Assembly (NCBI RefSeq): GCF_000315625.1
Contig: NW_005434627.1
Span: 185,915-229,367, forward strand
Source of the DNA: Guillardia theta CCMP2712
Lineage: Eukaryota; Protista; Cryptophyta
Direction of reading: 5' to 3'
Length of the DNA stretch: 43,453 nt
This document shows, piece after piece, positions 2,456-31,148 of this stretch. The notes under the pieces were generated by a model. The model was not told where the DNA came from, made no database searches, and was given only the letters and a program-made list of their open reading frames with translations. A program made the position numbers and the translations under genes. Numbering within the stretch: the first letter of the stretch is position 1; each line of letters begins with the position of its first letter.

Positions 2456-3339
2456 GCTTGTCTACGTGGCTTCCCGCGTGGCGGCTGGCAGTGACGGTGT
2501 AGGGTCTGGTTGCCAGCAGTGCTGGTTACTTTCGGTCTTATATTTCATGTGTTTGAGCCGCGTTTGTTGCTACCGCTTGAAGTGCCGGGGCGGCGTCGCC
2601 GGGGAGAATCGGCGGCCTTCCCGCTTGCCACTGACTAGCCTCATCGGGCCGCCGGGCCACGGACGGGCAGCCGGGCCACATTCTAATCCTGACTGGTACC
2701 CTCTGCTGATTTCATCTCAGGTATATAGCAGACATTACATCTGATCCCCGCTTTGGCGGGGCTGAGTCGACCTGCCCGGGTTGCCACCGTGACGGGTGGC
2801 ACTCAGGGGCACCGGGCACGGTAGCTTGCCTTGAAACGCGCAGCTATTGATCCGATGATCAGCGTCGAGTCTAGTACTGAACTTTCAATACTTCTGCTCA
2901 GTAACCTCCGAATTGCCAACTGGTATCCACGGGTGTATGCCCGGCGATCTCAGTCGGTCACTGACCGGGCCCCGGCCCGGCCGCTGCGAGTCGGACAGTC
3001 GAACTAACGGAAGTTGATTGATCCCCCCGGGCAGTGCCGCCACTAAGCGAGCTCGCCTCAGAGCTCTCAGTCAGCTTGCAGAACACCTAGCCTACCACCC
3101 TGTAGAAAATGACCCCTACCCCCCCAAAAGTATCTAATTCCAACAAAGTGCAGGATCGTACCTACTTGAAACGCTGTTTCCTACCGAATCATGATCATGC
3201 TGATAGTACCGGTAGTATTACTACCCCATCAAATGTACCCACCCCCCGTGGTAGAAACCTCAGACATCTCTTGTCTCAGTCCTCCCGCCCTCCTCGATCC
3301 TCCCCCTGCCTCCCCTTCTCATCCTCCCCGCCCCCACCC

Positions 3340-3580
3340 ATGCCTCCTGCTCCCCACCCCATGCCTCCTGCTCCTCCTCCTCTTCCTCCTGCTGCTCCTG
3401 CTGCTCCTGCTGCTCCTACTGCAGCTGCTGCTCCTGCTGCTCCTGCTGCTGCTCCTGCTGCTGCTCCTGCTGCTCCTGCTGCTGCTCCTGCTGCTCCTGC
3501 TGCTCCTGCTCCTGCTCCTGCTGCTCCTTCTTCTACTGCTCCAGCTCCTGCTCCTGCTGCTCCTGCTGCTCCTGCTTCTG
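3340..3580. repeat. (GCT/CCT)n low-complexity repeat
   Basis: Tandem CCTGCTGCT/GCTCCT units. Confidence 0.9.
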
Positions 3581-3918
3581 TCCTGCTGATGTCGCTGTTG
3601 CTGTTGTCCTCCTCGTTCTCATCGCCCTCTTCCTTCGCCTTCCCTTCCCTCTCCTCATCCTTATACTCGTTTTCATTGTTTTCTCCTTGTTCCCACCCCT
3701 ATGTCAAATTTCCCTCCTCCTCTTTTCCCTCCTCTCTCTTTCCCTCCTCCAGTCTCCCAGATCATTCACTCCGTCATGTTCCCCCTCCCCTTCCTCACCT
3801 CAACTGTCTCCCATCCTTTATCTTGTCTCCTGGACCTCCTTACCTCCTCTTTGTCACCTACCCGCTCCCCTTGTGATCCCGCTCCTCTGCCTTGGGCCCC
3901 AAACTCTTGCCTAACCTT

Positions 3919-3951
<33 letters not shown>

Positions 3952-4606
3952 CTTTCATTGACCTTATCCTTCCTCTTCCGCATCGTTTTCCTCCCCAAAT
4001 GTTCCCTTTCACCCCCGTTCTCCTTTACATTTCCTCCGATGTGGTCACCTTGTCCTGTTTCCTGCACTCCCTGAATTATCGCTGTACCGCTTCTCCTACA
4101 AGTTCCCCATCCCCTCATTCTTGTCTCTCTCTTGCTTCTTCCGTCTTCTTCCAAAAGGGCGTTCTTGCACCTCTTTCCTTCCTGCTGCTGATTCTACAGC
4201 AACTCGTCCTTTTGATACTCTCTACTTCCCTCGCCTTCTTCATCTTGCTCCCTCCTGACCTCTTGCTCCCTCCTGACCTCTCCTCCATGAGGAGTAGGAC
4301 GAAGAAGATCGGCGTCCAACTCTCCTTCCAAATCTTTCTGTTGCTTCTTTCCGACGTCTCACCATCTGCTGTCTTCCCCATCTTCGCCTCTTACACGATT
4401 TGTGCTCACTGCTTTGATTGCAAGGTCTTGTCCGCTCATTAGCCCGCCGCTCTCATGCTGGTCTGCTATCCACTCATGCGCAGTTATCTTGTGCTTGGCT
4501 GTCCAAGATCCTCCATACCAGGCGTGTAGAGGCGTGTGGTCTCATACTTGCACAAAAAATGTGCAGCTTCTGATTTTGGCTCTCCCTGGAAGAGCCTCGA
4601 CCAGAC

Positions 4607-7600
4607 ATGCCTGTGCGCAACATCAAGAAGCAAGATAAGATCGTCTCTCAGCAGAGAATCGAGACCTCACCACAAGAATTTCTCAAGGACGACGAAGCCA
4701 AGGAGTGCAATGACGTCAGCTTAGACGGATGCAAGCATGAGAAGGAGCCACAAGGATGTGACGATGAAAGTGTCATCTGTGAAGGAGGCCTCGAAAATTT
4801 CATTTGGCTCCCAGTAAAGGGAATGACACTGCTAGAAGAGCAGGTAATGCTCGTTTTTCGGTCTGTGTTTTTCTTCCGTTCCTTTCCGTTACCCCATTTG
4901 GGTCGATGACTCCTGGCAGGAACTTCCCTTGCTTGCAACCAGCCCGATCAGCTACGTCAAACTTCGGAATCACATCTTGTCTACGTAAGCACTTGTGACC
5001 TGTATCCATGGTTCAGCTTCACCTAGGTGGCATAAGAATCCGTCGCAAGAGCTCACACACGAGGCTGCAGCTCTCGATGCTCCGATAGTGTTCCACAGGC
5101 GAGAAGCTCAAGCAGAGGTGAAGCGTCTGACGTTTGTCGAGTACCTAATGCTTTGCAGGCCATCCGTCTGATCCACGAGTTCTTGTCTTGCCATGGACAT
5201 ATTAATGTCGGCGTGTTCGCACCGAAGACGCCGACATTGATGTCGAACTCTAGCACAGCCACGGCAGGCAGCGAAGATGGAGGGGCAGGAGTGGAAGGGG
5301 GAAAGGGAGAAGCGTATGATGTGATCGTGGTTGGAGGAGGAATCGCAGGTGGCGAAGCGGGAGAAAGGAGAGAAACGTTTTGCTCTTGACCTCATGCACA
5401 TGGCAGGTTTGGCAGCAGCAAGTCAGCTGAAGAGAAGAGGACACAAGGTGAGGTCAAGGTCGATGGTCTGGCTGGAAGAAAGTGACTCCCTGCAGGTTGT
5501 GGTCTTGGAGGCTCAGAGCTTCATCGGGGGTCGAGCACGAGCAGGAGGCTGGAACAACCGAGACGAGTTCTTGACCTCCAGGCAGAAAAGCCTCAAGAAG
5601 AAGAAGACAGCCGAACCCCCGGCGGTGAAGCTCCAAGAAATGAGAGACAGCAGAAGTGACTCTCATCGCTTCCAGGACCACAGGCCTCACGAGGAAGGCA
5701 CTGACGGAGGAGCTTCGACTGCCTTGGACTTTGGAGCGATGATTATCACAGGGATATGGGGTAACCCGATAGCGATGCTGTGCAGGTAAGAGCGCTGGAG
5801 CCTGCTCAAGCTGACCCTGCAAAAGGCAACTAGGCATCAAGATGCAGCAGATTAAGAACGCCTGCCCTCTCCTCGATGCTGAGCCGGTCCTCTTCTCCTC
5901 CACTCTCCTTCTATTCCCTCCTTCTCTCTCTCCTCCTCTTGTCCTGTTTCATTCCTTTTCGCCTCATCATCGGGGTTCCCAACCCCTTCTCCGCTGCATT
6001 TTGCTGATGTGCTAACAGCAAGGAAGCTTCAAGGACGTGTCCTGTAGGAAGCTTTCTCCTCCTGAGGTACAGCCTGACGAACGTAACAAGTTGTGCTCGT
6101 TATCCATGACAAGTCTCCGGAACCTCAACAGGGAGCATTGCTGCATCATTCCATCCCCAAGGACGTCGACAACAAGATTCAAGTATGATGCTCAGAGTAG
6201 CAGCAGCAGCAGGAGGTGCACTGCTTTCCTCACCCTTTGGCAGTCAATCTTCAATAAGGCTCTCACCGCAGCTTGCAATAAGAGGAAGCATCTAGCTGAC
6301 GATCAGGTGAGATCATGATGCAGATGGCAGGACGAGAGAGCAGAGGATAACGGCATGGAATAGGACTTGTCATTGGGAGAAGAGCTCTTGAGAGTGCTTC
6401 ACAACTACAAGTTCTCTCAAGTCGAGACTCGAGTCTTAAACTGGCACATTGCCAACCTCGAGTATGGATGTGGAGCTCCTCTTGACGAGGTTGACTTGCC
6501 CTGACCCCTCATCATCCTCACCATCCTCACCCCTCGTCCTCTTCTTCATCTTCCTCACCCTCGTCCTCTTGTTGCTCACCATCAGTCCTCTTGCAGGTTT
6601 CTCTTCGTTTCTGGGATCAAGACGACGCGTTTGGCTTCGGCGGGCCGCACTGTCTCATCCCGGGGGGTTACCAGCGCATCGCCGAGGAGCTCGCGAAGGA
6701 GGTGGAGGAGATCAGACTGAACGCGGAGGTGGCACGGGTGCGATGGACGGGACGAGGAGGCGAGAAGAAGCGGAAGGAGGAGGGAGAGGAGACGCAGGAG
6801 CTTTCACCTCCTTCTGCCGAGAGCAAAATCGAGTCCCTCCTGTGCGTGGGGGCGTTTGTTGGGAAACTGAATGCAGGGACGCAGGAAGTGAGGGCGATGG
6901 AGAGCGTGAGGACGAAACACAAAGTACCCGAGGGGTGGAGAATCTTCTCGACGATGAAGAGAGTCTCTACCTCCTGCTTCTCCTTGTCAGGGGGCGGAGG
7001 AATCGACTGCGACGTTGTGTTTCAAACCGAAAGGGGGGTGAAGCTGCGCAGCATCGGAGACGCGAAGAGAGAGATCAAACGAATGCGATCGGGCAGCTGG
7101 GAGGAGGAGAAGCAGCAGGAGGCTCTACATGACGTCAACAAGGTGCTGCGAGACATGTGCCGGCTGGAGGCCGAAGATGGGCAAAGAAGAGAATGCGAGA
7201 GACAGATCCTCCAATCTCTTGGGCTGAGTTACGAGGAAGAGGACGAGGAAGAGGACGAGGATGACGAGGAGGAGGCAGAGACTACGTCTGAAGTGTCAGA
7301 TAGGGCAGGAGAGTGGGAAGAAGGGATGGAAGTAGAGATGTACTTCAGTGATGGCATGTGGTATCGGGGACGCGTGACGTCATTGGAGGACAAGGTAGCA
7401 GTGATCGACTTTGAGGATGGTGACAGGCAGACGGTCAGACTGCCAGACCCGGACGTGCGTCCCGTGAGAGCTCTTGGGTCGTCGTACATGCAAAGCAAGG
7501 AGGAGGAGAAGGAGACTGAGGAGGAGGAGAAGATGAAATGCGGCTCCCATTGGAAGAGAAAAGGAGAAGGAGAACGTAGGAAAAACTCTCAGGGTGAGCA

Positions 7601-9632
7601 GAAGAGGCCGAGGAGGAGCGCAGTGGACCAGCAGCTGCAGGTCGGGGATGAGGCAGAAGTTCTTTTCAGCGATGGCGTCTGGTATCGGGGACGAGTGACA
7701 GCAAGAAAGGAGAACCTCATCCATGTCGCTTTTGCCGATGGCGACCGGCAGAGTTTCCTCCTCCCAGACCCAGATGTCCGCCCTGCTACTGCTCCCTCTG
7801 CCTCCGACATGTCCTCTCCATCCACTGACGACAGAAGTGTGCAAACAACCCTGAAGGATGATGAGGAGAGCGAGAAGGTGGAGAACATGGATAGGGAGGA
7901 CAAGCAGGACAAAGAGGAGAGCGAGAGCGAAGAGAAAAGGGAGAAGGAGAACGAGAAAAGCGAGAAATCGAATAGCGTGGAAGCTTCAACGTCGCTGAAC
8001 GACATGGATATTGGGAGTGCGGGACAGTCTACTTTGGGAAGAGGGAGCAAGCTCAAGTACCACGTTGGCATGCAAGTTGAGATGGTTCGCTATGTAGTCT
8101 TTTCCTACCTTCTGCCTTCTTGCCCCTTCCCCCTACACCCCTCCCTCCCCTTCTCTCTCTCACAATTGTTTCAGTTCTTCGATGATGGTGTCTGGTATCG
8201 AGGGCGCGTTGCCTCGCTGTTGCAGGACGTTGCGACAGTTTTCTTCGAAGACGGCGACGTGCAGCAAGTGTCACTCCCTCACCCTGACGTGCGTCCCGCT
8301 CGACCTCCTCCTCCTGTCCGCGTGCACACAAGGGACGGGCAGACGTTGAGAAGCAGAGCAGTGCTGCTCTGCGTTCCCATGGGAGTGATCCAACAGGGAG
8401 CAATGAAGTTCGAGCCTTCTCTCCCTTCCTGGAAGCATGAAGCCATTCGGCGGTCTCTCCCTCATATCTACTTGTTGCACTCCTTCCAAGTCCTCTACTT
8501 CTCTCTCTGCCCCTCTTCCTCCTCCCCTACTGCTCCTCCTCCTCCTCCTCCTCCTCCTCCTCCTCCTCCTCCTCCTCCTGTTTCTTACCTTATCTTATCG
8601 TCTCTGCAGTGCTGGCAATGGACTCATCAACAAGCTCACGATTGAGTATCGAGGTCGCCCGCCACTCCCTCGTCTGCCCTCACTCGTTCCTTCAGAAGTT
8701 TTCTGGGACCCTCAGGTGGATTTCTTCGGAACCACCTCCTCAGTAGTCGAGGTAGACGAACGCGAAGAGCAGCAAGGTCTGACGAGGCAGTAGGAGCGAG
8801 GAGCCTTCTTCCTGGTGTGGAGCCTCTTCCGCTTCACAGGTGACGAGACTTGACAGCAGACAGAGCGATGAAGAGCGAACATAGAGTGGGAGAGGATGAG
8901 AGGGGAGGGGAGGAGGGGAGGGGAGGGTTGGTGATCACGTACAGGTCGCCCTATCTTGATTGCAGTCTTGTCTGGAGCAGCAGCGAGGAAGTACGAGAGC
9001 CTTCCAGATGACACCGTAAGAACCTCAGCGATCGAGAGGACCTCGTTGCTGTCTGTCTTGCTGTCTGTCTTGCTGTCTGTCTTGCTGTCTGTCTTGCTGT
9101 CTGTCTTGCTGTCTGTCTTGCTGTCTGTGGCTGCTTGGGCGTCTTATCCTCTCATCTTCCTTCAGGTCGTCAGGAGGTTCCACGAGGCCATCACCAGCAT
9201 CTTCGGTCACGTGCCACAACCCGAGAGGAGTCACGTTACGCGATGGGGAAGCAACCCTCATGCTCGCGGCGCCTACTCGTTCGTCAAGGCGAGTCACCTC
9301 CCCGCCTCCCCCCCTTCCCCCGCTCATGTGCAGGTCATGCAGGTCGGCAGCAAGGGAGGGCCAGACTACGATCTGTTGGCAGAGCCCGTCGCAGGGCAGG
9401 TGGAGCATCTCAGTTGCGAGGGAGAGCGAGTGAGGAAGATGGCAGGTGTTCTTCGCGGGAGAGGGGACGTGCCGCGAGCATCCGGCAACGGCAGCAGGAG
9501 CGTACTTGACGGGGCTGCGAGAGGCAGGTGATCGCTTGAGCTGCCTGAGTTTGAGCTGGTGGCTGACGAGCTGTAGCTCGCTTGCATCGCCTGCTGTCGG
9601 AGATGAAGGGCGAGGCGAGGGATGACAGATGA
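4607..9632 (+). CDS. LSD1: Lysine-specific histone demethylase 1 family (SWIRM plus FAD-dependent amine oxidase), multi-exon, with inserted MBD-like and 3 Tudor domains
   Basis: Spliced peptides: SWIRM YVKLRNHILSTWHKNP and IHEFLSCHGHINVGVF; Rossmann motif VIVVGGGIAG|LAAASQL; VVLEAQSFIGGRA; DFGAMIITGIWGNPIAMLCR; LNWHIANLEYGCGAPLDE|VSLRFWDQDDAFGFGGPHCLIPGGY; GLINKLTIEY (catalytic Lys equivalent); VTRWGSNPHARGAYSFV; FFAGEGTCREHPATAAGAYLTGLREA. The 3' end could extend to ~9840 if one more intron is used. Confidence 0.93.
9049..9128. repeat. 12-bp tandem repeat (CTGTCTGTCTTG) x~6.5, intronic
   Basis: Directly visible; lies in an LSD1 intron (gtaaga at ~9016 to cag at ~9165). Confidence 0.9.
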
Positions 9633-10109
9633 AGAAGAGAGAAGAGAAATGGTGCGAAGAATTCATGTACATGAAAGAATTTGCAACCTAAAGGCGGCGA
9701 TGAGCATGAGGTTGGCGAGAAGGAGCAGCATGAGAAGGAGGCGGTTGAGGGCAGGAAGCGCTACCAACGCCCAAGAAGGGCCGCAAAAACGACCTGAGTT
9801 AGTATCAGTTCTCGTCATGATGAGCAGTGAAGTCACGTAGAGCAGAAGGAGCAGGAGAATGATTGGAACCAACCAGACATCTGCGAATATCAAGATCTGA
9901 CGGAAGAAACAGTTGAGTTGCAATCAGTCCGTCGTCATGTCAAATTACCAGAGAAGCAACGAAAGGGAAGCATCTCATACAGTTTGAAAGTAAAGCATCA
10001 AAAACATACAAAAATATCTCACAAGTTCCCGCATGTCACAACAAAGTTCCATCATTTGCAGTCAATAAGAACATGTACAAACTCATCTTTCACTTTACCG
10101 ATCTCACTA

Positions 10110-13773: not shown

Positions 13774-15876
13774 ATGATGATGATGATGATGATGATGGAG
13801 ATGATGATGATGGTGGTGATGCTGATGATGATGATGATGATGATAATGATNNNNNNNNNNNNNNNNNNNNNNNNNNNNNNNNNNNNNNNNNNNNNNNNNN
13901 NNNNNNNNNNNNNNNNNNNNNNNNNNNNNNNNNNNNNNNNNNNNNNNNNNNNNNNNNNNNNNNNNNNNNNNNNNNNNNNNNNNNNNNNNNNNNNNNNNNN
14001 NNNNNNNNNNNNNNNNNNNNNNNNNNNNNNNNNNNNNNNNNNNNNNNNNNNNNNNNNNNNNNNNNNNNNNNNNNNNNNNNNNNNNNNNNNNNNNNNNNNN
14101 NNNNNNNNNNNNNNNNNNNNNNNNNNNNNNNNNNNNNNNNNNNNNNNNNNNNNNNNNNNNNNNNNNNNNNNNNNNNNNNNNNNNNNNNNNNNNNNNNNNN
14201 NNNNNNNNNNNNNNNNNNNNNNNNNNNNNNNNNNNNNNNNNNNNNNNNNNNNNNNNNNNNNNNNNNNNNNNNNNNNNNNNNNNNNNNNNNNNNNNNNNNN
14301 NNNNNNNNNNNNNNNNNNNNNNNNNNNNNNNNNNNNNNNNNNNNNNNNNNNNNNNNNNNNNNNNNNNNNNNNNNNNNNNNNNNNNNNNNNNNNNNNNNNN
14401 NNNNNNNNNNNNNNNNNNNNNNNNNNNNNNNNNNNNNNNNNNNNGGAGTTAAAGGAGGAGGAAGAGGAGGTCGAGAATGAGGAGGAGAAGAAGAAACTCG
14501 AGGAGGAGGAGGAGGAGGAGGAGGTGGTGGTGGTGGTGGAGGAGGAGGTCGATGAGGAGGAGGAGTACCTGGGCTGTCAGCCCTGTCTTAGTGAGATCGA
14601 GTTCCTGCCATGTTTGCTTTGCCGCCAGGAGCTGCAGGAGGTGCGAACCCCCCGCTGCTCCCAAGTCGTTGTATGACAAACTGATACTGAGCGGCAGGTC
14701 AGCGATAACTTCCTGCCCTCGCCTCCTCCTCCTCCTCCTCCTCCTCCTCACCTCGTTATGCTCGGGTGATTGTGCGCGGCGTTCAACACTCCCATGCATT
14801 CGGCGACCCACAGCTTGCAGTTGCTGAGCAGCAGCCGCTCGAGCCTCTGGTGCTGGCGGATCACAGCCAAGAGAAGCTGCAGACACTCGCCATGGACGGC
14901 ACTGCCGGAGAGGTCGAGGACCCGCAGCTGAGTTTGTCGCGTGAGCAGAGTCAAGACCTCTTTCATCATCCAGTAGTTGAGCTAGCAGGTAGTCAGGCCG
15001 GCAACTAGAGAACAGAAGGGGAGGGGAAGGGGGAGGGGGAGGGGAAGAACCTTGACGGGGGAGAGGTCCAGCTCTTGGATCTCTGCTTGGCTTGCAGCAT
15101 CTTCGATCCACATGGCGTCGACCCGCAGGCAGGAGCAGCCGAGGAGGCGCGAGTGGTTGACGGACACGAAGACCATGTCCTTGTTGGCCTGCAGGCGGTG
15201 GGGTCATGCAGGAGCGCAGGAGGCAGCAGGCCATGGGTACCAGGCTGATCGTCCTCCTTGCGATCTCGTCGCTGCTGATCGTCCTCCTTGCGATCTCGTC
15301 GCTGCTGGTCTTGATGAACGACTTGACGCGCGTCAGGCTGTGGATGGCTCGGGTGATCATCGGGCATCCCTCCATGATCCTCAGCCGGCTGTTCCACCCG
15401 TTTTGCTCCAGCGCTGCAGCGACTAGAAACCCTTCCGGCTGCTGGCAGATACCTTGCAGCGCGACCATGATCTCTCTCTCCGACAGCTGCTCGTTCCTCA
15501 GGATGTCGTTGAGCGCTGAGGCGACCAGCGTCTCCACCCTCTTCCGATCCCTCCGCAAGCTCCTCTCCTTACACCGCGACAGCTCTGCCAGCAAGTCAGA
15601 CCAGGCGACACAACTTGGACTCGTACCGAAGTCAGCTGGACCCTGACCGTCTCGCTCGCCTCCGAGGTCAGACTCATGTCGGGGGGGAAGGGCAGGGAGG
15701 CAAGTTTGTATGACTGGCCAGACTGTTCAGAATCTCTTGACAACCTCCCTCCGGCTACCTGTCTCCTCCTCATCCCAGTAGGACAGGTCGCGAGTTGCCT
15801 CCTTGTCGTCAAGGATCAGCTCCCCGACCACATCCATGAGCCTCCTCAGCCTCGGCCTGCTGTCTGCCATCAACAT
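13149..15876 (-). CDS. RNI-like leucine-rich repeat protein (spans an assembly gap) with a C-terminal MGLHPRLG...LLTDNLVDMIL motif
   Basis: LRRs IQELDLSPV, LRVLDLSGSAV, LERLLLSNCKL, LSLSYNDLGAAGGSHL, WQELDLTKTGL. Consistent GT-AG exon chain from ATG 15876 (MLMADSRPRLRRLMDVVGEL). Last exon VLLEEEEA* ends at 13149; linkage across the gap is assumed. Confidence 0.78.
13851..14444. other. Assembly gap (N run); further gaps at 17955-18332, 20740-20839, 34284-34383 and 42275-42374
   Basis: Runs of n, each flanked by simple repeats or a GC-rich island. Confidence 1.
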
Positions 15877-18537
15877 CCGTCACCCTGCTGTAGGCGATAC
15901 AAGACGGCAAGAAGCAACACTCCGGCCTTGAAGCAGCAGCAGCAATGAGGGCAGGCGACGTGAGAGACACAGGAAGGAAAGGAAGGGAAGGATCAAAATG
16001 GGTTGTCAAGGGATGAGGTCGGAGGTGGCAGCAGTGAGGGGATATCTTGATAGCTGTAAAGGTGATGATAACACCTTTACAGCAATGTTGATACGTGTAA
16101 CATGCCAGCAACGAGATCATGCGAGTGAAGGAGAAGAGGTGAAGACAGGGACGAGAGCGATAGGGGTGCATTGAGCACATGCTGTGCTGTGCCGCTGGTG
16201 ATGATGATGCTCTGCCAACGAAGACAGGGTGATGAGGATGTGCAGACATGACGGGAAGTAGCCGAACATGAGGGAGTGAGTGAGTGAGTGAGGGAGGGAG
16301 GGAGAAAGGGAGGAGGGAGAGAGGGAGGAGGGTCATGAGGGAGGAAGGGAGGGAGGGAGGAGGGACATGAGGGAGGAGGGAGAGATACGAGGATCATCTC
16401 TGTGTTAGGGGAGAGGAGCCATTGCGAGCAGGGACTGGTGAGATATCCCAAAGCTGAACTAGTGTTGTTGAGAGGGGTGGGGGTATATTGTTTCCCACGG
16501 AAGTAGGGGTATCGTGATATGAATATGTAGGGTGGGGTCATCACAATTTCCCAGGGTATAATGTGGGTGGGTGGGTCAGTGGGGCGCTACTGGAGTTTAA
16601 AATGAGTTTTAAATATCGAGATTAAGATAGGGGTGGGTAGTACGAAACGTGAGAAGTCCCTCCATCATCTTTGTATGAATATCATGAAATTTCTATAAGT
16701 AAGATACTAAGTGATTTGATAGAAGGTTCAACCCTTACCCTCCTGCCTCCTCCCAGTGCCCCATAACTTCTGTCTCCTGTCTCTCCCTCTCCTCGCTCAA
16801 CCTTCTGTGTCAACTTTAAAAATAACCACAAATCTTTCACCACCCCACCCCATACAGGGCAACTCAATCATTACCCCTACCCCTTCTCCCCACATTTGTA
16901 CCTCCACCTACCCTACCTATTGTCAGTTCACCACCCCAACTTTCCTAATTCCTCTATCCCACGCGAACCTACCCCACCCACCCCAGTCTTGTCACCGACC
17001 CCCACACTCGTCATTCCTCCCGCGAATGTACCCCACCCTCCTCATTCACTCATCAACAATGGTCAGAGCAGGGGGTACTGGTACCCCGGAAAACTGATGA
17101 CGGACCGAGCCCAACCGATCAGGTAAGTAAACCAGTAAAAACTACTTCCTCGTACTGATTTTTAACTCAACTTTGAGTAAAAAAAGTAAAACCCGTAAAA
17201 ATCGGACTCAGAACAGCCAGCTGTAGCCTAGTCACTGAGGCTCAGACTCGGAACTTCGGAACTTGAAGAGTGACGGGCCGGGCCCGGGCCGTACTACGTC
17301 AACTGGACAGACGGAGCACACTGAAGTTTGTTACTGAGACTTGTACTGCACTGTGCCACTGAAGTAATGCAGACATCACATAGACCCAAGTTAAGGGGCC
17401 CGCCAACAAGTTGCAACTTACCCGGCGGACCGTGGCAGTTTTTGCTCACTGAGGGCCGGGCCGAGTTTAAGTAGTGCACACGAACTTGAACGGTCCGACA
17501 GAACTTGAAGGCTTCGGTGACTTCGGAATCAGTAGGCTCGGAGTGATACATCGGAGAGAGGCTTCTGAGACCGTTGTATGCTAGGATGTGAAACCCGCGC
17601 GGCGCACTGCCAGGAGGCTGGCACTGACTCGGAGTGAGTGACGGTGGTTGAAGCCGCCGGGGCACCGTGACCGTCGACCCCTCAGGGCGGCAGACTCCGT
17701 ACATCCGATCATGCCGCCGAGTCGGATTGAAGACGCGGCTAGGAACTTGAAGGCCTCATCCGAAGTTCGTCGCACCGTCGTACTACGGTACTCAGTGACT
17801 TGTCAGTGACCGTTGGTGCCGCATCCGGCGAGGCCGCAGTGGCACGGCCCGCGCCGGCCGGGCGGGCCGCCGGGGCGGCGGCCCGGTCCGGCCGCCGCCG
17901 CCGGTCACCGCGGCCCACTGCCAGGCTGGCACAGTGATCGCCCGGTCTCCGACTNNNNNNNNNNNNNNNNNNNNNNNNNNNNNNNNNNNNNNNNNNNNNN
18001 NNNNNNNNNNNNNNNNNNNNNNNNNNNNNNNNNNNNNNNNNNNNNNNNNNNNNNNNNNNNNNNNNNNNNNNNNNNNNNNNNNNNNNNNNNNNNNNNNNNN
18101 NNNNNNNNNNNNNNNNNNNNNNNNNNNNNNNNNNNNNNNNNNNNNNNNNNNNNNNNNNNNNNNNNNNNNNNNNNNNNNNNNNNNNNNNNNNNNNNNNNNN
18201 NNNNNNNNNNNNNNNNNNNNNNNNNNNNNNNNNNNNNNNNNNNNNNNNNNNNNNNNNNNNNNNNNNNNNNNNNNNNNNNNNNNNNNNNNNNNNNNNNNNN
18301 NNNNNNNNNNNNNNNNNNNNNNNNNNNNNNNNGGGGGGGGGGGAAGGAGACAGGTCAGCAGCAACCCAGACGATGATGAGATGAAGGAGGAGGTGGTGGA
18401 AAGGCGACGAGAGTGCATGAATCTCCTCGTGTATCAGGACAGCTTCATGATGCTTGTGGAACTCACAGATGCTCAGGAACATCAAGACAAGATGGTCCAA
18501 GCTCGCTGAGTTGGTTGCCAGCACATCTGATCTCGAC

Positions 18538-19590
18538 ATGTATCAGCATTCCCGTCGTGCTGCCATCAAGTCTGTGAGGTGGTTGCTCTGCTTTGTTCTT
18601 CTGCGAGCTAGCGACTCGTTTTTGGTCTGCAACGAGTTGCAGTCAGTGTGCATCAAGAGCTTGCTGGGTAGCACAAGTGCCAGCAGCTCCTGCGCATGGC
18701 GTGAGGCTCGTGTGGCTCCCTCAGGAAGAGCGTTGGACCTGCCTGGAGGGAAGGGAGGGAACTGCTGGTTCAGAGGAGGAAGGCTGCGGTTGCAACTGCA
18801 TGCCGGGCCCAGGCCGTCTCGCGCCATGGCGGAGGAGGTGAAGACGAGAGGAGGTAACTCGACGAGGACGATGGAGGCGACCAGAGGGAGAGACGTGCTG
18901 GAGACGCTGGCGGGGTGGCAGCAGCGATGGGGGAGGAGCGAAGTGTGGAAGTGGCGGTGGAAGGGCTCCTGGCTGTGAGCGATGCAGGTAAGAGCACGCG
19001 GGGGTGACGCGAGTGAGAGATGAGCAGCGAGGAAGTCGAAGTTGGACGTGTCGCTCCTCCCCGACCCCTCCAAGTCGCTCGAGAAGATCAGCAAGCTCGT
19101 CGAGACCTCCGCCGGCTCCCTGGCACCCTCCCAACTGGTGAACTTGATCAGACGGTGAGTGGAAGCATGATGGAGGAGGAGGAGGAGGAGGAGGAGGAGG
19201 AGATGCATCTTATTTGACGATGACGACTGCAATGGTGGTGGTGATGATGCTGGAGATATTGAGGTTGCTTGGACGTTGGTTCTACACATGAGCTGGATGG
19301 TTGGGTTGTATCATGACGTTTGTATCAGTTTACCTTCTTCCCATCTGTTCTCTTCTCTTCGTCTCAAGCTTTCTGTCTCTCTTCAATCCCAACTTGACAG
19401 GTTCAGCACGCTCTCTCGCTGCCCTCCTCCTCCTCCCACGTCTCTCTGACCTCTCTGCCAGTCTCTCCTCCAAGGAGATCTGCCTCCTCCTCAACCTCGT
19501 CGCTCGGGCCCACAAGATCCCCAAGACAAGGCAGGACGTTAGTACCTGCTGACATCTCCCCCGCTCCTCCTCTCCTTTGGTCCTTCTGTT

Positions 19591-29105: not shown

Positions 29106-31148
29106 GCAGCTACCAGCTCTACCTCGCGTCACCTCCACCTGAGGCACTCGACAGAGTGTCCACAACTGCGCAAGCTGAACAATGAAAGTCTGTTTGAACT
29201 TGAACTTTGAGTTGAAGGCCGGGGGACTCGTGACGCCCGCCCCGGCGGCCGCACACCGCCGCTCAGGGGCCGCCGCGATGACCAAACGGAGAGTCACTGA
29301 GTGGCAGCCGGGCCTCGTCCACCGCGTCACGCCGCCCGGCTGACTCACAGTGAGTACTACCGTAGCCACGAGAGGTTCCGACGTCGGCAATCAGGCGCGT
29401 CACGTCGTTCTTCCGAGTCAGCCCGGCGGCCCCCGGATGTATGATGAACTCGGAAGTGGATTCTGAGACTCTGTGCATTGAACTGACTCGGCGGCCCGGA
29501 CTCGGACTCGGGAACGGTCACGGCGGTCGACGGTCCGATCCCGGCCCCCGCGAGTCGGCGCCCGGCGCGGCCGGGCACTGCCGCAGGCCGCTGAGTCCGA
29601 GAGTCGCCGCCGCGAGTCGCCGGGTCGGGTGCTCGCGGCCCAACTCCCGGCCCTTGAACATTCGGACTCGACCGTGGGGTCGGCGAGCCCGGCCCGTCAC
29701 GGCTGGCCCCGGGCGGCCGCCGGGCAGGCGGGCGGCAGGCTCAGGCCGGGCCGCCCCGCCGGGGCGCCGAGTCGGCACTGCACAGTGTCGCCGGGAGACG
29801 GTCATTTAGAACCCCCCACCATCACCACCCCCAAATCTATGGAACACGAACCGGGTCCGGCACGGAGTGGCAAGGAGACATGTGGTACGTACCCGGTGGT
29901 TGGAGGAACTGGAGGCCGAGAAGTAGGCGGGGTAGGGGTGGAGGCAGTTGCAAAGCGTTCGAAAGAGGGGGTGGGGGTTACTGCAAGAAATTACCAATAT
30001 AGTAGGGTAGGGTTATGAAAAGGGGGGATATATCGAAGATTCTTAAGGTCAAAGGGAGGGGTGATGATGGAAGAAGTACCCCCTGTGGGGTAGGAGAATG
30101 GAAGTGTGAATGGTGGGGGTGGGGTCAGAGGAACTTGAGACTGACAATGGCGCAAGCCATACAATAGTTTTATCCAGATTTTACAAATATTATATAACTC
30201 AAGATGGTCAAATATATAATACCTTTATAGAGAGTTTGGATCGAAAGGCTGTACGGAATAATTTTAAAACTAATTTTTATTTATTAGTATGTTTTATATA
30301 CAGTTTCATTACTATGTAATTTATAACTCCCTCGACCAAAAAATGTCATTATATTATTTTTAAATCAGGCCCCCGATTAGTTGCGGAGTACAAAGAGGGG
30401 ATACCCCACCGGTTTATTTTCCATAGAATCAGTGGGTAGGGGTGTAAAATATACCGGTCATTGAGACTGTATTAGACAGGGTGGGGAGTGTAAGATGAAC
30501 CACCGGGTACAATTGTAGGAAAAATCACCGGTACTGAAAAATATGACCACCCCTAGCAGTCTCTAGAAGCTAATAGGTGGTTGTGCCTAGCACAAGTCAA
30601 GTTGTTCCAGGGGTGGGGGTGGACAAAACAAGGGGTGGTATGCTTTGAATAGTACCGAAATTATAAAACTATTTAGTTCATGAAACAGGAGGTATGGTAC
30701 TACATGCTCTCAATCTGGGCACAGATTAATTTTGTTAAAATATTTTATTCAGTACCATTGCTTCTCCATCCCTACTACACGGATGATGCAAAGATGGTAC
30801 CTTTCATTCTTTGCAGTACCATTTACAGCAGCCCTCTTTTATGTTACCAGGCTTGCCTCTATACATGGCCTTTTAACACAGGTCACTTCGACTTCAATCA
30901 CTACAGTTTTAAAATATATAAACACTGAACAAAAATTCATTAAAAATGTTATAGAATACAAAAATATTGTAATATAGAGCAAATTATTGACTAAAACTTC
31001 AAGGTACTACACAGCAGGTGTGTTTTCGTTTCTCGTAGTTTCTCAGGGGGGTCTGTACCCCTGCCGGTAAAGTCGCGACCTCCCCCCGCCCCCCTCACCT
31101 TCCCCTCCATGCTGAAACAGTGCGGAGGCATGGAAGGAGGAAGAGACG

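What the first reader, a model, noticed from the sequence alone, without database searches (positions are those of the whole stretch)
6747..8315. LSD1-type demethylase with an MBD-like domain and three Tudor domains inserted inside its amine-oxidase fold
Seen: between two normally adjacent amine-oxidase strands (IRLNAEVARVRW and VRVHTRDGQTLRSRAVLLCVPMGV) lies a ~490-aa insert. It contains VPEGWRIFSTMKR...GGIDCDVVFQTERGVKLRSIGDAKREI (~6920-7080), matching the methyl-CpG-binding-domain pattern (PxGW...DVxxxxxxGxKLRS), and three Tudor-like repeats (~7311-7463, ~7631-7784, ~8058-8300). The position of the CoREST-binding Tower in human LSD1 is short here, so there is no Tower. Established: animal LSD1 and plant LDL/FLD proteins are SWIRM plus amine oxidase, LSD2 adds zf-CW, and they generally depend on partners for targeting. 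Inference: a self-targeting eraser coupling (methylated) DNA reading and methyl-Lys/Arg reading to histone demethylation in one chain. I know no characterised KDM1 with this architecture. The FAD motifs and catalytic Lys appear intact.
Basis: partly seen in the sequence, partly recalled or inferred. Interest (0 to 1): 0.82.

Follow-up and report, generated by a model that had tools for sequence, protein, structure and literature searches.

The report
LSD1 demethylase with nested reader domains
A cryptophyte alga (Guillardia theta) makes an LSD1-type histone demethylase whose catalytic domain carries, inside one surface loop, a 493-residue block with three Tudor domains and a probable but divergent MBD-like DNA-binding domain. 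This nested layout was not found in about 175 other LSD1 relatives and suggests an enzyme that carries its own targeting module.

Summary
The window is Guillardia theta nuclear DNA. The gene is GUITHDRAFT_110688 (CDS 4607-9632, 22 exons), a SWIRM + FAD amine-oxidase protein of the KDM1/LSD1 family without a Tower.

A 493-aa insert (window 6747-8315) sits in the beta-hairpin that matches human LSD1 residues ~596-599. Spliced transcript contigs from three studies carry the insert unbroken. Only a 90-nt in-frame intron inside Tudor 3 is removed.

- **Tudor domains:** three are solid. Pfam TUDOR scores over its cut-off, the AlphaFold model has pLDDT ~90, and Foldseek matches PHF1/PHF19 Tudors.
- **MBD-like part:** probable but divergent. 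Pfam MBD does not hit it. A profile comparison with G. theta's own MBDs, a homologous stand-alone MBD-Tudor-Tudor gene from a metagenome, and two structure libraries all point to the MBD/TAM fold. The Tyr that contacts 5-methylcytosine is Val, so methyl-CpG reading is doubtful.
- **Conservation:** Hanusia phi has the same architecture as far as its partial contig reaches (second half of the MBD-like domain onward). Domain blocks are under purifying selection and linkers are free.
- **Rarity:** none of about 175 other KDM1 relatives has a comparable insert or this Tudor type.

Self-targeting is an inference. I rate it a new variant of a known kind, restricted to one lineage. The scan had not noted this architecture on other DNA.

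The parts
4607..9632 (+). CDS of GUITHDRAFT_110688 (KDM1/LSD1-type), 22 coding exons, 1170 aa (P0001). The transcript spans at least 4421-9867.
   Evidence: The transcript contig L001 aligns at ~100% identity in exon blocks. Spliced contigs of 3 runs show GT..AG joints. P0001 translates from L001.
4832..5206 (+). SWIRM domain (P0001 aa 76-147), spread over exons 1-4
   Evidence: Pfam PF04433: 41.7 bits against a cut-off of 28.6.
5318..6746 (+). Amine-oxidase N-terminal part, from the FAD GxGxxG motif (DVIVVGGGIAG) to strand IRLNAEVARVRW. The Tower position is short.
   Evidence: Pfam Amino_oxidase and NAD_binding_8. PDB LSD1 alignment reaching human residue ~600.
6597..8084 (+). Exon 13, 1488 nt, by far the longest exon. 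It carries 150 nt of oxidase and then most of the insert.
   Evidence: Exact walk of L001 on the window. Record 1 of run X1 covers 6595-8083 with 0 differences.
6747..8315 (+). The 493-aa insert (P0001 aa 455-947), nested in the beta-hairpin that matches human LSD1 ~T596-G599
   Evidence: The gap at this site is 1-106 aa in 148 other KDM1 relatives.
6831..6869 (+). Short conserved ESLLCVGAFVG motif upstream of the MBD-like domain, shared with the stand-alone relative L013
   Evidence: BLASTP of P0001:455-645 against L013: E 6e-10.
6918..7088 (+). MBD/TAM-like domain (aa 512-568) with a long Ser/Gly-rich loop between the first two strands
   Evidence: For: hhalign against G. theta MBDs gives P 1e-4 to 2e-4, with 0 of 300 shuffles reaching the score. 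The AF2 model m3228c44a7d74 gives Foldseek top 40 all MBD/TAM, VIA Z 5.2 and rmsd 2.2-2.5 A over 63/63 residues of MBD4, and 8 of 10 ESM-atlas rows in PF01429 clusters. Against: Pfam PF01429 gives no hit.
7095..7244 (+). Helical linker with conserved Cys residues (LRDMCRLEAEDGQRRECERQILQSLGL)
   Evidence: AF2 predicts a helix at model residues 94-134. The linker is conserved in Hanusia phi and L013. dN/dS is 0.10.
7233..7304 (+). Acidic low-complexity stretch
   Evidence: Read from the sequence.
7314..7472 (+). Tudor domain 1 (aa 644-696)
   Evidence: AF2 pLDDT ~90. Foldseek matches the PHF1 Tudor at TM 0.78 and rmsd 1.5 A. dN is ~0 against Hanusia phi.
7638..7793 (+). Tudor domain 2 (aa 752-803)
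   Evidence: Pfam TUDOR and Agenet. Alignment A5. dN/dS 0.05.
8061..8306 (+). Tudor domain 3 (aa 893-944), split by the intron at 8085-8174
   Evidence: dN/dS 0.08.
8085..8174 (+). 90-nt in-frame GT..AG intron inside Tudor 3. It is the only intron in the insert.
   Evidence: The joint 8083->8174 appears in contigs of 3 runs. Exon walk.
8316..9632 (+). Amine-oxidase C-terminal part (exons 14-22). It includes the Lys661-equivalent codon at 8632-8634 and the Tyr761-equivalent codon at 9274-9276.
   Evidence: phmmer against PDB LSD1: E 8e-47, alignment. Coordinates.

Best explanation
The gene encodes a KDM1/LSD1-family FAD-dependent amine oxidase (SWIRM + oxidase domain, no Tower). A ready-made chromatin-reader module has been inserted into one exon, and it emerges from a surface beta-hairpin of the oxidase.

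The module has, in order: a divergent MBD/TAM-like domain, a Cys-containing helical linker, an acidic stretch, and three single Tudor domains joined by disordered linkers.

Shown here:
- The insert is translated as part of the mature mRNA.
- The domain blocks are under purifying selection between Guillardia and Hanusia.
- The oxidase keeps its FAD motif and the Lys661 and Tyr761 equivalents.
- The same MBD-like/helix/Tudor/Tudor module exists as a separate gene in an uncultured eukaryote.

Inferred:
- The module tethers or orients the demethylase on chromatin in cis. The Tudors would bind methylated Lys or Arg on histone tails and the MBD-like domain would bind DNA. This would replace or supplement partners such as CoREST, which the missing Tower cannot bind.
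- The enzyme removes mono- or dimethyl groups from histone lysine (H3K4me1/2 by analogy).
- Methyl-CpG selectivity of the MBD-like domain is unlikely to be canonical, because the 5mC-contacting Tyr is Val.
For: - **Family:** Pfam Amino_oxidase 226 bits and SWIRM 41.7 bits. The best solved relatives are LSD1 (E 8e-47) and LSD2. The K661 and Y761 equivalents are conserved.
- **Insert in mRNA:** JGI transcript contigs L001 and L002 encode the 1170-aa protein. Contigs of three runs from three studies are spliced at every intron and cover 6595-8083 without a break.
- **Tudors:** PF00567 at 40 bits against a cut-off of 23. AF2 pLDDT ~90. Foldseek hits PHF1, PHF19, MTF2, RDM15, PHF20 and TDRD3 Tudors. 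A profile of the repeats hits KDM4B/4A double Tudors at E 3e-6.
- **MBD-like:** hhalign P 2e-4 in the right register. The score of 26.2 compares with shuffles at 9.5 +/- 2.1 and a maximum of 17.5. L013 is homologous over 132 aa (E 6e-10) and its equivalent region hits Pfam MBD at E 0.002. An AF2 model built without any canonical MBD in its alignment returns only MBD/TAM chains in Foldseek's top 40. VIA gives Z 5.2 and rmsd 2.2-2.5 A over 63/63 residues. Eight of ten ESM-atlas rows are MBD clusters.
- **Conservation:** the Hanusia phi contig L015 shows the same order of parts as far as it reaches; it starts within the MBD-like domain. dN/dS is 0-0.17 in domain blocks. Linkers have dN of 0.6-0.86.
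- **Rarity:** 148 other KDM1 relatives have 1-106 aa at this site. None of about 175 has this Tudor type.
- **Insertion into an exon:** the insert has 1 intron in 1479 nt. The rest of the CDS has 20 introns in 2034 nt.
Against: - Pfam's MBD model does not hit the region at E <= 10 in any slice, while two genuine G. theta MBDs score 24-26 bits.
- A 4-sequence HMM of G. theta MBDs does not score the region either.
- The first AF2 model, from a single sequence, gave no fold there (pLDDT 30-37).
- The second model has a mean pLDDT of only 65.
- In the unbiased VIA search, MBD4 is tied with unrelated chains at Z ~5.
- The Tyr that contacts 5mC is Val, and the first Arg finger is ambiguous (K-R).
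- The Tudor cage has three aromatic residues plus two Asp rather than four aromatics, so ligand binding is not assured.
- No binding or enzymatic assay exists.
- I could not model the whole protein to see where the module sits relative to the active site.
Confidence: 0.62

Rival explanations
1. The insert is a Tudor-only reader module. The 'MBD-like' stretch would be a beta-hairpin plus helix of another kind, for example a protein-protein interaction or hinge element that only resembles MBD by motif.
For: There is no Pfam MBD hit and no hit with a G. theta MBD HMM. Foldseek E-values are only 0.04-1. VIA Z of 5.2 does not stand above unrelated chains. The 13-residue Ser/Gly loop and the Tyr-to-Val change are atypical.
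Against: Four independent weak lines converge on the same family in the same register: hhalign, the L013 bridge to Pfam MBD, and MBD-only tops in PDB Foldseek and the ESM atlas. MBD2 is also one of only two PDB sequences hit by the module-only profile.
Confidence: 0.2
2. The enzyme is not a histone H3K4 demethylase. It would act on other methylated proteins, or on polyamines, and the Tudors would bring methyl-Arg or methyl-Lys non-histone clients to it.
For: No activity has been tested. Some Tudor relatives (TDRD3, SMN-type) read methyl-arginine on non-histone proteins. Polyamine oxidases are the next-best solved relatives.
Against: SWIRM plus oxidase with LSD1/LSD2 as best matches defines KDM1. 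The closest Tudor relatives by profile are histone readers: KDM4A/B, PHF1/19, RDM15. An MBD-like domain fits a chromatin role.
Confidence: 0.12
3. The insert is a tolerated, functionally neutral insertion into a variable surface loop. Protist proteins often carry long low-complexity inserts.
For: The site varies in length across the family (1-106 aa). The linkers between the domains are low-complexity and evolve freely.
Against: The domain blocks have dN/dS of 0-0.17 with saturated dS, while linkers have dN of 0.6-0.86. The folds are recognisable. The whole layout is kept in Hanusia phi.
Confidence: 0.05
4. The architecture is a gene-model or assembly artefact, with two genes fused or an intron read as coding.
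For: The RefSeq model does contain one retained intron elsewhere.
Against: Independent transcript assemblies from at least three studies span oxidase-insert-oxidase in one frame with all introns removed. Hanusia phi shows the same junction from Tudor 3 into the oxidase.
Confidence: 0.01

Closest known systems
Human KDM1A/LSD1 (e.g. PDB 2iw5, 2v1d)
   Same: SWIRM plus FAD amine-oxidase domain. It is the best solved match for the C-half (E 8e-47). The Lys661 and Tyr761 equivalents and the FAD motif are conserved.
   Different: This protein has no Tower, hence no CoREST-type docking. It has a 493-aa reader module in the hairpin at ~596-599, where LSD1 has a tight turn.
KDM1B/LSD2 and plant LDL/FLD
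   Same: These are Tower-less KDM1 enzymes. LSD2 adds a reader-type domain (zf-CW) in the same chain (Zhou & Ma 2008, PMC2579438).
   Different: Their extra domains are N-terminal, not nested in the oxidase. They have no Tudor and no MBD. No zf-CW was found here.
Other lineage-specific KDM1 fusions (S. pombe Lsd1/2 with HMG box, from my own knowledge; ARID, SRI and DEK_C fusions seen here)
   Same: A KDM1 core joined to a DNA- or chromatin-binding accessory domain.
   Different: Those domains sit at the termini. None has Tudor or MBD, and none is inserted in the catalytic domain.
KDM4A/B/C (JMJD2) JmjC demethylases with a C-terminal double Tudor
   Same: A histone demethylase and Tudor readers in one chain. 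These Tudors are the best solved sequence relatives of the repeats here (E 3e-6).
   Different: The catalytic class is unrelated (JmjC dioxygenase). They have a hybrid double Tudor at the C-terminus rather than three single Tudors nested inside the catalytic domain.
PHF1/PHF19/MTF2 Tudor (H3K36me3 readers) and RDM15 Tudor (H3K4me1 reader)
   Same: Best structural matches of Tudor 1 (TM 0.7-0.8, rmsd 1.4-2.3 A).
   Different: The fourth aromatic cage position is Asp or Arg here (F-[EA]-D-G-D). Ligand specificity is unknown.
MBD / TAM domains (MBD2, MBD3, MBD4, MeCP2, BAZ2A/B)
   Same: The predicted beta-hairpin plus helix fold, the PxGW ... D-V ... G-x-K-L-R-S register, and the conserved Asp and second Arg.
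   Different: The score is below Pfam's threshold. There is a 13-residue extra loop. The 5mC-contact Tyr is Val, which is a larger change than the Tyr-to-Phe change in MBD3. MBD3 and TAM domains are not methyl-selective (from my own knowledge).
Stand-alone MBD-like/helix/Tudor/Tudor gene on metagenome contigs L013 and L014 (Ga0315908/7), and P0002 (ENA)
   Same: The same order of parts, with homology from the CVG motif through the MBD-like domain and helix (E 6e-10) to the Tudors (55% identity).
   Different: It is not embedded in an oxidase, because the next gene starts about 150 nt after Tudor 2. It has two Tudors, not three. Its MBD-like loop is of near-canonical length and it scores 18 bits with Pfam MBD.

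Membership tests
KDM1/LSD1 family | SWIRM domain N-terminal to the oxidase | tested here: met
   PF04433: 41.7 bits against a cut-off of 28.6, aa 76-147.
KDM1/LSD1 family | Flavin amine-oxidase domain closest to LSD1/LSD2 rather than to PAO or MAO | tested here: met
   PF01593 at 226 bits. PDB hits: LSD1 at 8e-47 and LSD2 at 5e-40, against PAOX at 4e-30.
KDM1/LSD1 family | FAD dinucleotide-binding motif, catalytic Lys (human K661) and Tyr761 | tested here: met
   DVIVVGGGIAG. K in GLINK aligns to chain index 491, which is K661. Y in RGAYSF aligns to Y761.
KDM1/LSD1 family | H3K4me1/2 (or other methyl-lysine) demethylase activity | not testable with these tools
   This needs an enzyme assay.
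KDM1A subtype | Tower coiled-coil insert that binds CoREST | tested here: not met
   About 85 aa lie between CPLLDA and NWHIANLEY, against about 180 in human LSD1. HMMER aligns query 255-285 to chain 201-311.
KDM1B subtype | N-terminal zf-CW | tested here: not met
   No zf-CW in the Pfam scan of the full protein.
Tudor domain | Match to the family profile above the curated threshold | tested here: met
   PF00567 scores 40.1 and 38.8 bits against a cut-off of 23 on the protein. Each repeat alone scores only 15-19 bits.
Tudor domain | Five-stranded barrel fold | tested here: met
   AF2 gives pLDDT ~90 with five strands. Foldseek matches PHF1, PHF19, TDRD3 and PHF20 Tudors at TM 0.7-0.8.
Tudor domain | Aromatic cage for methyl-Lys or methyl-Arg | tested here: inconclusive
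   F14, (W19-)Y20 and F36 are conserved, and D38 and D40 are invariant. The fourth aromatic position is not aromatic. This compares with 53BP1-type cages, from my own knowledge.
Tudor domain | Binding of a methylated peptide | not testable with these tools
   This needs peptide arrays or ITC.
MBD (PF01429) / TAM | Match to the family profile above the curated threshold | tested here: not met
   No PF01429 hit at E <= 10 on five different slices, nor in the whole-genome scan. The controls L004 and L005 score 24-26 bits.
MBD (PF01429) / TAM | Remote homology by profile-profile comparison or through an intermediate sequence | tested here: inconclusive
   hhalign gives probability 47-58% and P 1e-4 to 2e-4, with 0 of 300 shuffles reaching the score. 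The intermediate L013 links to this region at E 6e-10 and to Pfam MBD at E 0.002, which is below the cut-off.
MBD (PF01429) / TAM | Fold: beta-sheet wedge plus C-terminal helix | tested here: inconclusive
   The model core has pLDDT 70-85. Foldseek's top 40 are all MBD/TAM, but with E 0.04-1. VIA gives Z 5.2 and rmsd 2.2-2.5 A over 63/63 residues, tied with unrelated chains in the wide search. Eight of ten ESM-atlas rows are MBD clusters.
MBD (PF01429) / TAM | 5mC-contact residues (MeCP2 R111, D121, Y123, R133) | tested here: not met
   In the register: R111 aligns to K with R one residue later, D121 to D, Y123 to V, and R133 to R. The same residues are seen in Hanusia phi for the last three.
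MBD (PF01429) / TAM | Binding to (methylated) DNA | not testable with these tools
   This needs EMSA or fluorescence polarisation.

The most novel reading that the evidence does not exclude
The nested MBD-like domain would be a true reader of a DNA mark (5mC or another modification present in cryptophytes), and the Tudors would read a histone methyl mark. One polypeptide would then couple DNA-mark and histone-mark recognition directly to H3K4me1/2 erasure. That would be a single-chain version of the DNA-methylation/H3K4-demethylation cross-talk that animals and plants achieve with multi-protein complexes. The reader module, sitting on the oxidase, might also gate catalysis allosterically.
Probability: 0.15. 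Interest if true: 0.8.

Novelty: new variant of a known kind. Interest (0 to 1): 0.58.

Why it matters
LSD1-type enzymes are thought to keep a stable SWIRM-oxidase architecture (PMC2579438) and to rely on partner proteins for targeting. This one carries three Tudors and a probable MBD-fold domain inside its catalytic domain. It has no Tower, it is expressed, and it is conserved across two genera.

It is a natural experiment in cis-targeting of a flavin demethylase, and an example of a whole reader module being dropped into an exon of an enzyme gene. Several questions become directly testable:
- whether an LSD1 core tolerates and uses a nested reader;
- what the cryptophyte-expanded 'WYRG...F-x-D-G-D...PDP-x-VR' Tudor subfamily binds;
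- whether divergent MBD-like domains in algae bind DNA.

The case is restricted to one lineage and has no experiments behind it, so its weight is moderate.

Tried and rejected
- **Micro-intron in the MBD-like loop.** A 28-nt GT..AG stretch (about 6953-6980) could have been a micro-intron that would make the domain look canonical. I rejected this: all transcript contigs keep it.
- **Pfam MBD on slices.** Whole and half slices of the region gave nothing.
- **Other sequence searches of the region.** phmmer against PDB sequences, a two-sequence profile against PDB and the ESM-atlas feature search gave nothing useful.
- **Single-sequence AF2 of aa 495-700.** It gave no fold for the MBD-like part. 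Adding the Hanusia phi and L013 sequences helped.
- **G. theta MBD HMM.** A 4-sequence HMM did not score the region, but it did surface L013.
- **Word searches for orthologues.** The searches and the metagenome scan found no further orthologue that covers the first half of the MBD-like domain. The Hanusia phi contig starts inside the Ser-rich loop.
- **Raw RNA reads.** Run X19 gave almost no depth on the gene because only 6% of the run was read. The RNA evidence therefore rests on assembled contigs.
- **L013 as a possible LSD1 with the same insert.** I rejected this because the next gene begins just after its Tudor 2.
- **Not run.** No complex prediction was run.

Full report
**What is there.** The window is nuclear DNA of the cryptophyte Guillardia theta CCMP2712. 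The protein cluster holds XP_005830253.1 / EKX43273.1, GUITHDRAFT_110688, which the source calls 'hypothetical protein'; UniRef names it 'SWIRM domain-containing protein'.

A 3.9-kb JGI transcript-type contig (L001) encodes a 1170-aa protein, P0001. It aligns to the window at about 100% identity in 22 exon blocks. The CDS runs from 4607 to 9632. Introns are 41-150 nt, all GT..AG except one GC..AG intron at 9289-9342. Exon 13 (6597-8084, 1488 nt) is by far the longest exon.

**Check of the observation.**
- In P0001 the insert is aa 455-947, which is window 6747-8315.
- The third Tudor is interrupted by a 90-nt in-frame intron (8085-8174) that is spliced out.
- Alignment to solved LSD1 chains places the insert in the hairpin that matches human residues ~596-599. 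G. theta ...VRW aligns to human ...VRYTASGC600, and TLRSRAVLL aligns from human 616.
- The Tower position is about 95 aa shorter than in human LSD1.
- Lys661 and Tyr761 have identical counterparts.

**Is the insert in the mature product?** Yes.
- Contigs of three runs from three different studies are spliced at all introns. One 3921-nt record covers 6595-8083 with no difference and no gap.
- Ten of the runs listed hold 0.70-0.76 of the sampled words of 6300-8700, and one holds 0.80, about the exonic share.
- A candidate 28-nt micro-intron in the MBD-like loop is not removed.
- Raw RNA reads (X19) were too sparse to add anything.

**The enzyme.** Pfam gives Amino_oxidase at 226 bits and SWIRM at 41.7 bits. 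The best solved relatives are LSD1 and LSD2, ahead of polyamine oxidases. It is a KDM1-family member of the Tower-less kind, without a zf-CW. G. theta also has another KDM1-like paralogue on contig 27.

**The Tudors.**
- Pfam TUDOR scores 40 bits against a cut-off of 23. Each repeat alone scores 15-19 bits.
- A single-sequence AlphaFold model gives Tudor 1 a pLDDT of ~90 with five strands.
- Foldseek returns PHF1, PHF19, MTF2, RDM15, PHF20 and TDRD3 Tudors (TM 0.7-0.8, rmsd 1.4-2.3 A).
- A profile of eight repeats of this subfamily hits the KDM4B and KDM4A double Tudors best (E 3e-6).
- F14, D16, W19, R21, G22, F36, D38, G39 and D40 are invariant, and Y20 is nearly so. The cage therefore has three aromatics and two Asp. 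Binding is plausible but the ligand is unknown.
- The same subfamily occurs in at least seven other G. theta loci.

**The MBD-like part.**

Evidence against:
- Pfam PF01429 does not hit any slice at E <= 10, although two genuine G. theta MBDs score 24-26 bits.
- A small G. theta MBD HMM does not score it.

Evidence for:
- MAFFT and hhalign place it in the MBD register against four G. theta MBDs. hhalign gives P 2e-4 and probability 47%. The single-sequence score is 26.2, against 300 shuffles at 9.5 +/- 2.1 with a maximum of 17.5.
- Metagenome contig L013 encodes a stand-alone relative with the same order of parts: CVG motif, MBD-like domain, Cys-helix, then two Tudors. BLASTP over the non-Tudor part gives E 6e-10. 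Its MBD-like region hits Pfam MBD at 18 bits, E 0.002, just under the cut-off.
- An AlphaFold model was built from an alignment of only G. theta, Hanusia phi and L013, with no canonical MBD. Its core has pLDDT 70-85 and forms a beta-hairpin plus helix.
- Against 350,542 PDB chains, Foldseek's top 40 for this model are all MBD or TAM domains, with E 0.04-1 and probability up to 0.99.
- The VIA second look gives Z 5.2 and rmsd 2.2-2.5 A over all 63 residues of the MBD4 MBD.
- The ESM-atlas shape search gives MBD clusters in 8 of 10 rows.
- The module-only profile hits just two PDB sequences, and one of them is MBD2 in the right register.

Limits of that evidence: the unbiased VIA search does not lift MBD4 above unrelated chains at Z ~5, so the fold evidence is convergent but weak.

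I put about 0.75 on a divergent MBD/TAM-fold domain. In the MBD register, the Asp and the second Arg finger are kept, the first Arg is K-R, and the 5mC-contact Tyr is Val. Canonical methyl-CpG reading is therefore unlikely. G. theta does have DNMT-like genes.

**Conservation.**
- Hanusia phi (UniRef A0A7S0HVU7; JGI contig L015) has the second half of the MBD-like domain, the helices, Tudors 1-3 and the oxidase C-half in the same order. Its contig has a frameshift in Tudor 1.
- With dS saturated, dN/dS is 0-0.08 in the Tudors, 0.17 in the MBD-like part, 0.10 in the helices and 0.065 in the oxidase.
- The linkers have dN of 0.6-0.86 and carry indels.

**Rarity and origin.**
- An exhaustive phmmer search found 13,405 relatives. 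In 148 of the 150 best, the site holds 1-106 aa.
- None of about 175 KDM1 relatives has this Tudor type anywhere.
- Some have terminal ARID, SRI or DEK_C domains.
- The insert has one intron in 1479 nt, against 20 in 2034 nt elsewhere. With about 14.5 expected, the Poisson probability of one or fewer is about 8e-6. The insert has no intron at its borders.
- Together with the stand-alone relative, this suggests that a reader-module gene, or a copy of one, was inserted into an exon.

**Literature.** Zhou & Ma 2008 (PMC2579438) describe KDM1 as having a relatively constant domain architecture. The chromatin-evolution survey (bioRxiv 10.1101/2021.11.30.470311) does not mention LSD in its main text. 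Four further full-text searches found no description of a KDM1 with Tudor or MBD. Subscription journals are not covered.

**Verdict.** The architecture is real, expressed and conserved in two genera. The Tudors are certain and the MBD-fold is probable. Function as a cis-targeting module is inferred. I rate it a new variant of a known kind.

Noticed in passing
window 9289-9342: This is a GC..AG intron (54 nt, in frame). The RefSeq/GenBank model (P0003, 1194 aa) keeps it as 18 extra residues (ASHLPASPPSPAHVQVMQ), plus a 6-aa SPEPQQ segment. Neither is supported by the transcript contigs.
   Followed up: yes
window 9552-9900: The 3' end of the gene overlaps transcription from the opposite strand. 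A 43-nt joint from 9791 to 9835 has CT..AC ends, which is GT..AG on the minus strand. Raw reads of X19 lie almost only in the minus orientation (depth 8-21), while the demethylase itself has nearly none in that run.
   Followed up: partly
L013 1-1525, L014, L003 762-1931 (metagenome contigs Ga0315908/7 and ENA ERZ27246986): An uncultured eukaryote has a stand-alone gene with an MBD-like domain (Pfam MBD 18 bits), a Cys-helix and two Tudors 55% identical to those of the insert. A gene with FASTK/heptatricopeptide-like repeats follows it. L013 shows a duplicated exon end around a short intron (about 513-596).
   Followed up: partly
L026 (G000:C14:714500-724499) about 3141-6600, + strand: Another G. 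theta gene region combines a Pfam-positive MBD (25 bits), several Agenet/Tudor-like repeats (VGMELEAEM...WRF), an ARID-like stretch and one Tudor of the same subfamily as the insert (50% identity). Earlier notes of the scan on this genome also mention MBD-like plus Tudor readers.
   Followed up: partly
L015 about 440-450 (Hanusia phi transcript contig): There is a one-base frameshift inside Tudor 1 of the Hanusia orthologue. The gene caller therefore split it into two ORFs. This may be an assembly error, as only a single contig is available.
   Followed up: no
window 3100-3900: A long CTG/GCN-type triplet-repeat tract (poly-Leu, poly-Ala or poly-Pro depending on frame; GC skew -0.5) lies upstream of the gene, in what is probably intergenic or 5' flanking DNA.
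   Followed up: no
window 14001-15000, 18001-19000, 30001-31000: Three AT-rich islands (GC 0.33-0.40) lie in a window that is otherwise 50-65% GC.
   Followed up: no
L012 (G000:C48) minus strand: An ORF shows an MBD C-terminal-half-like stretch (...VVLKTIYDVKKFLEAKEIDEDEASRFDF). It was picked up only weakly (7.6 bits) by the G. theta MBD HMM.
   Followed up: no
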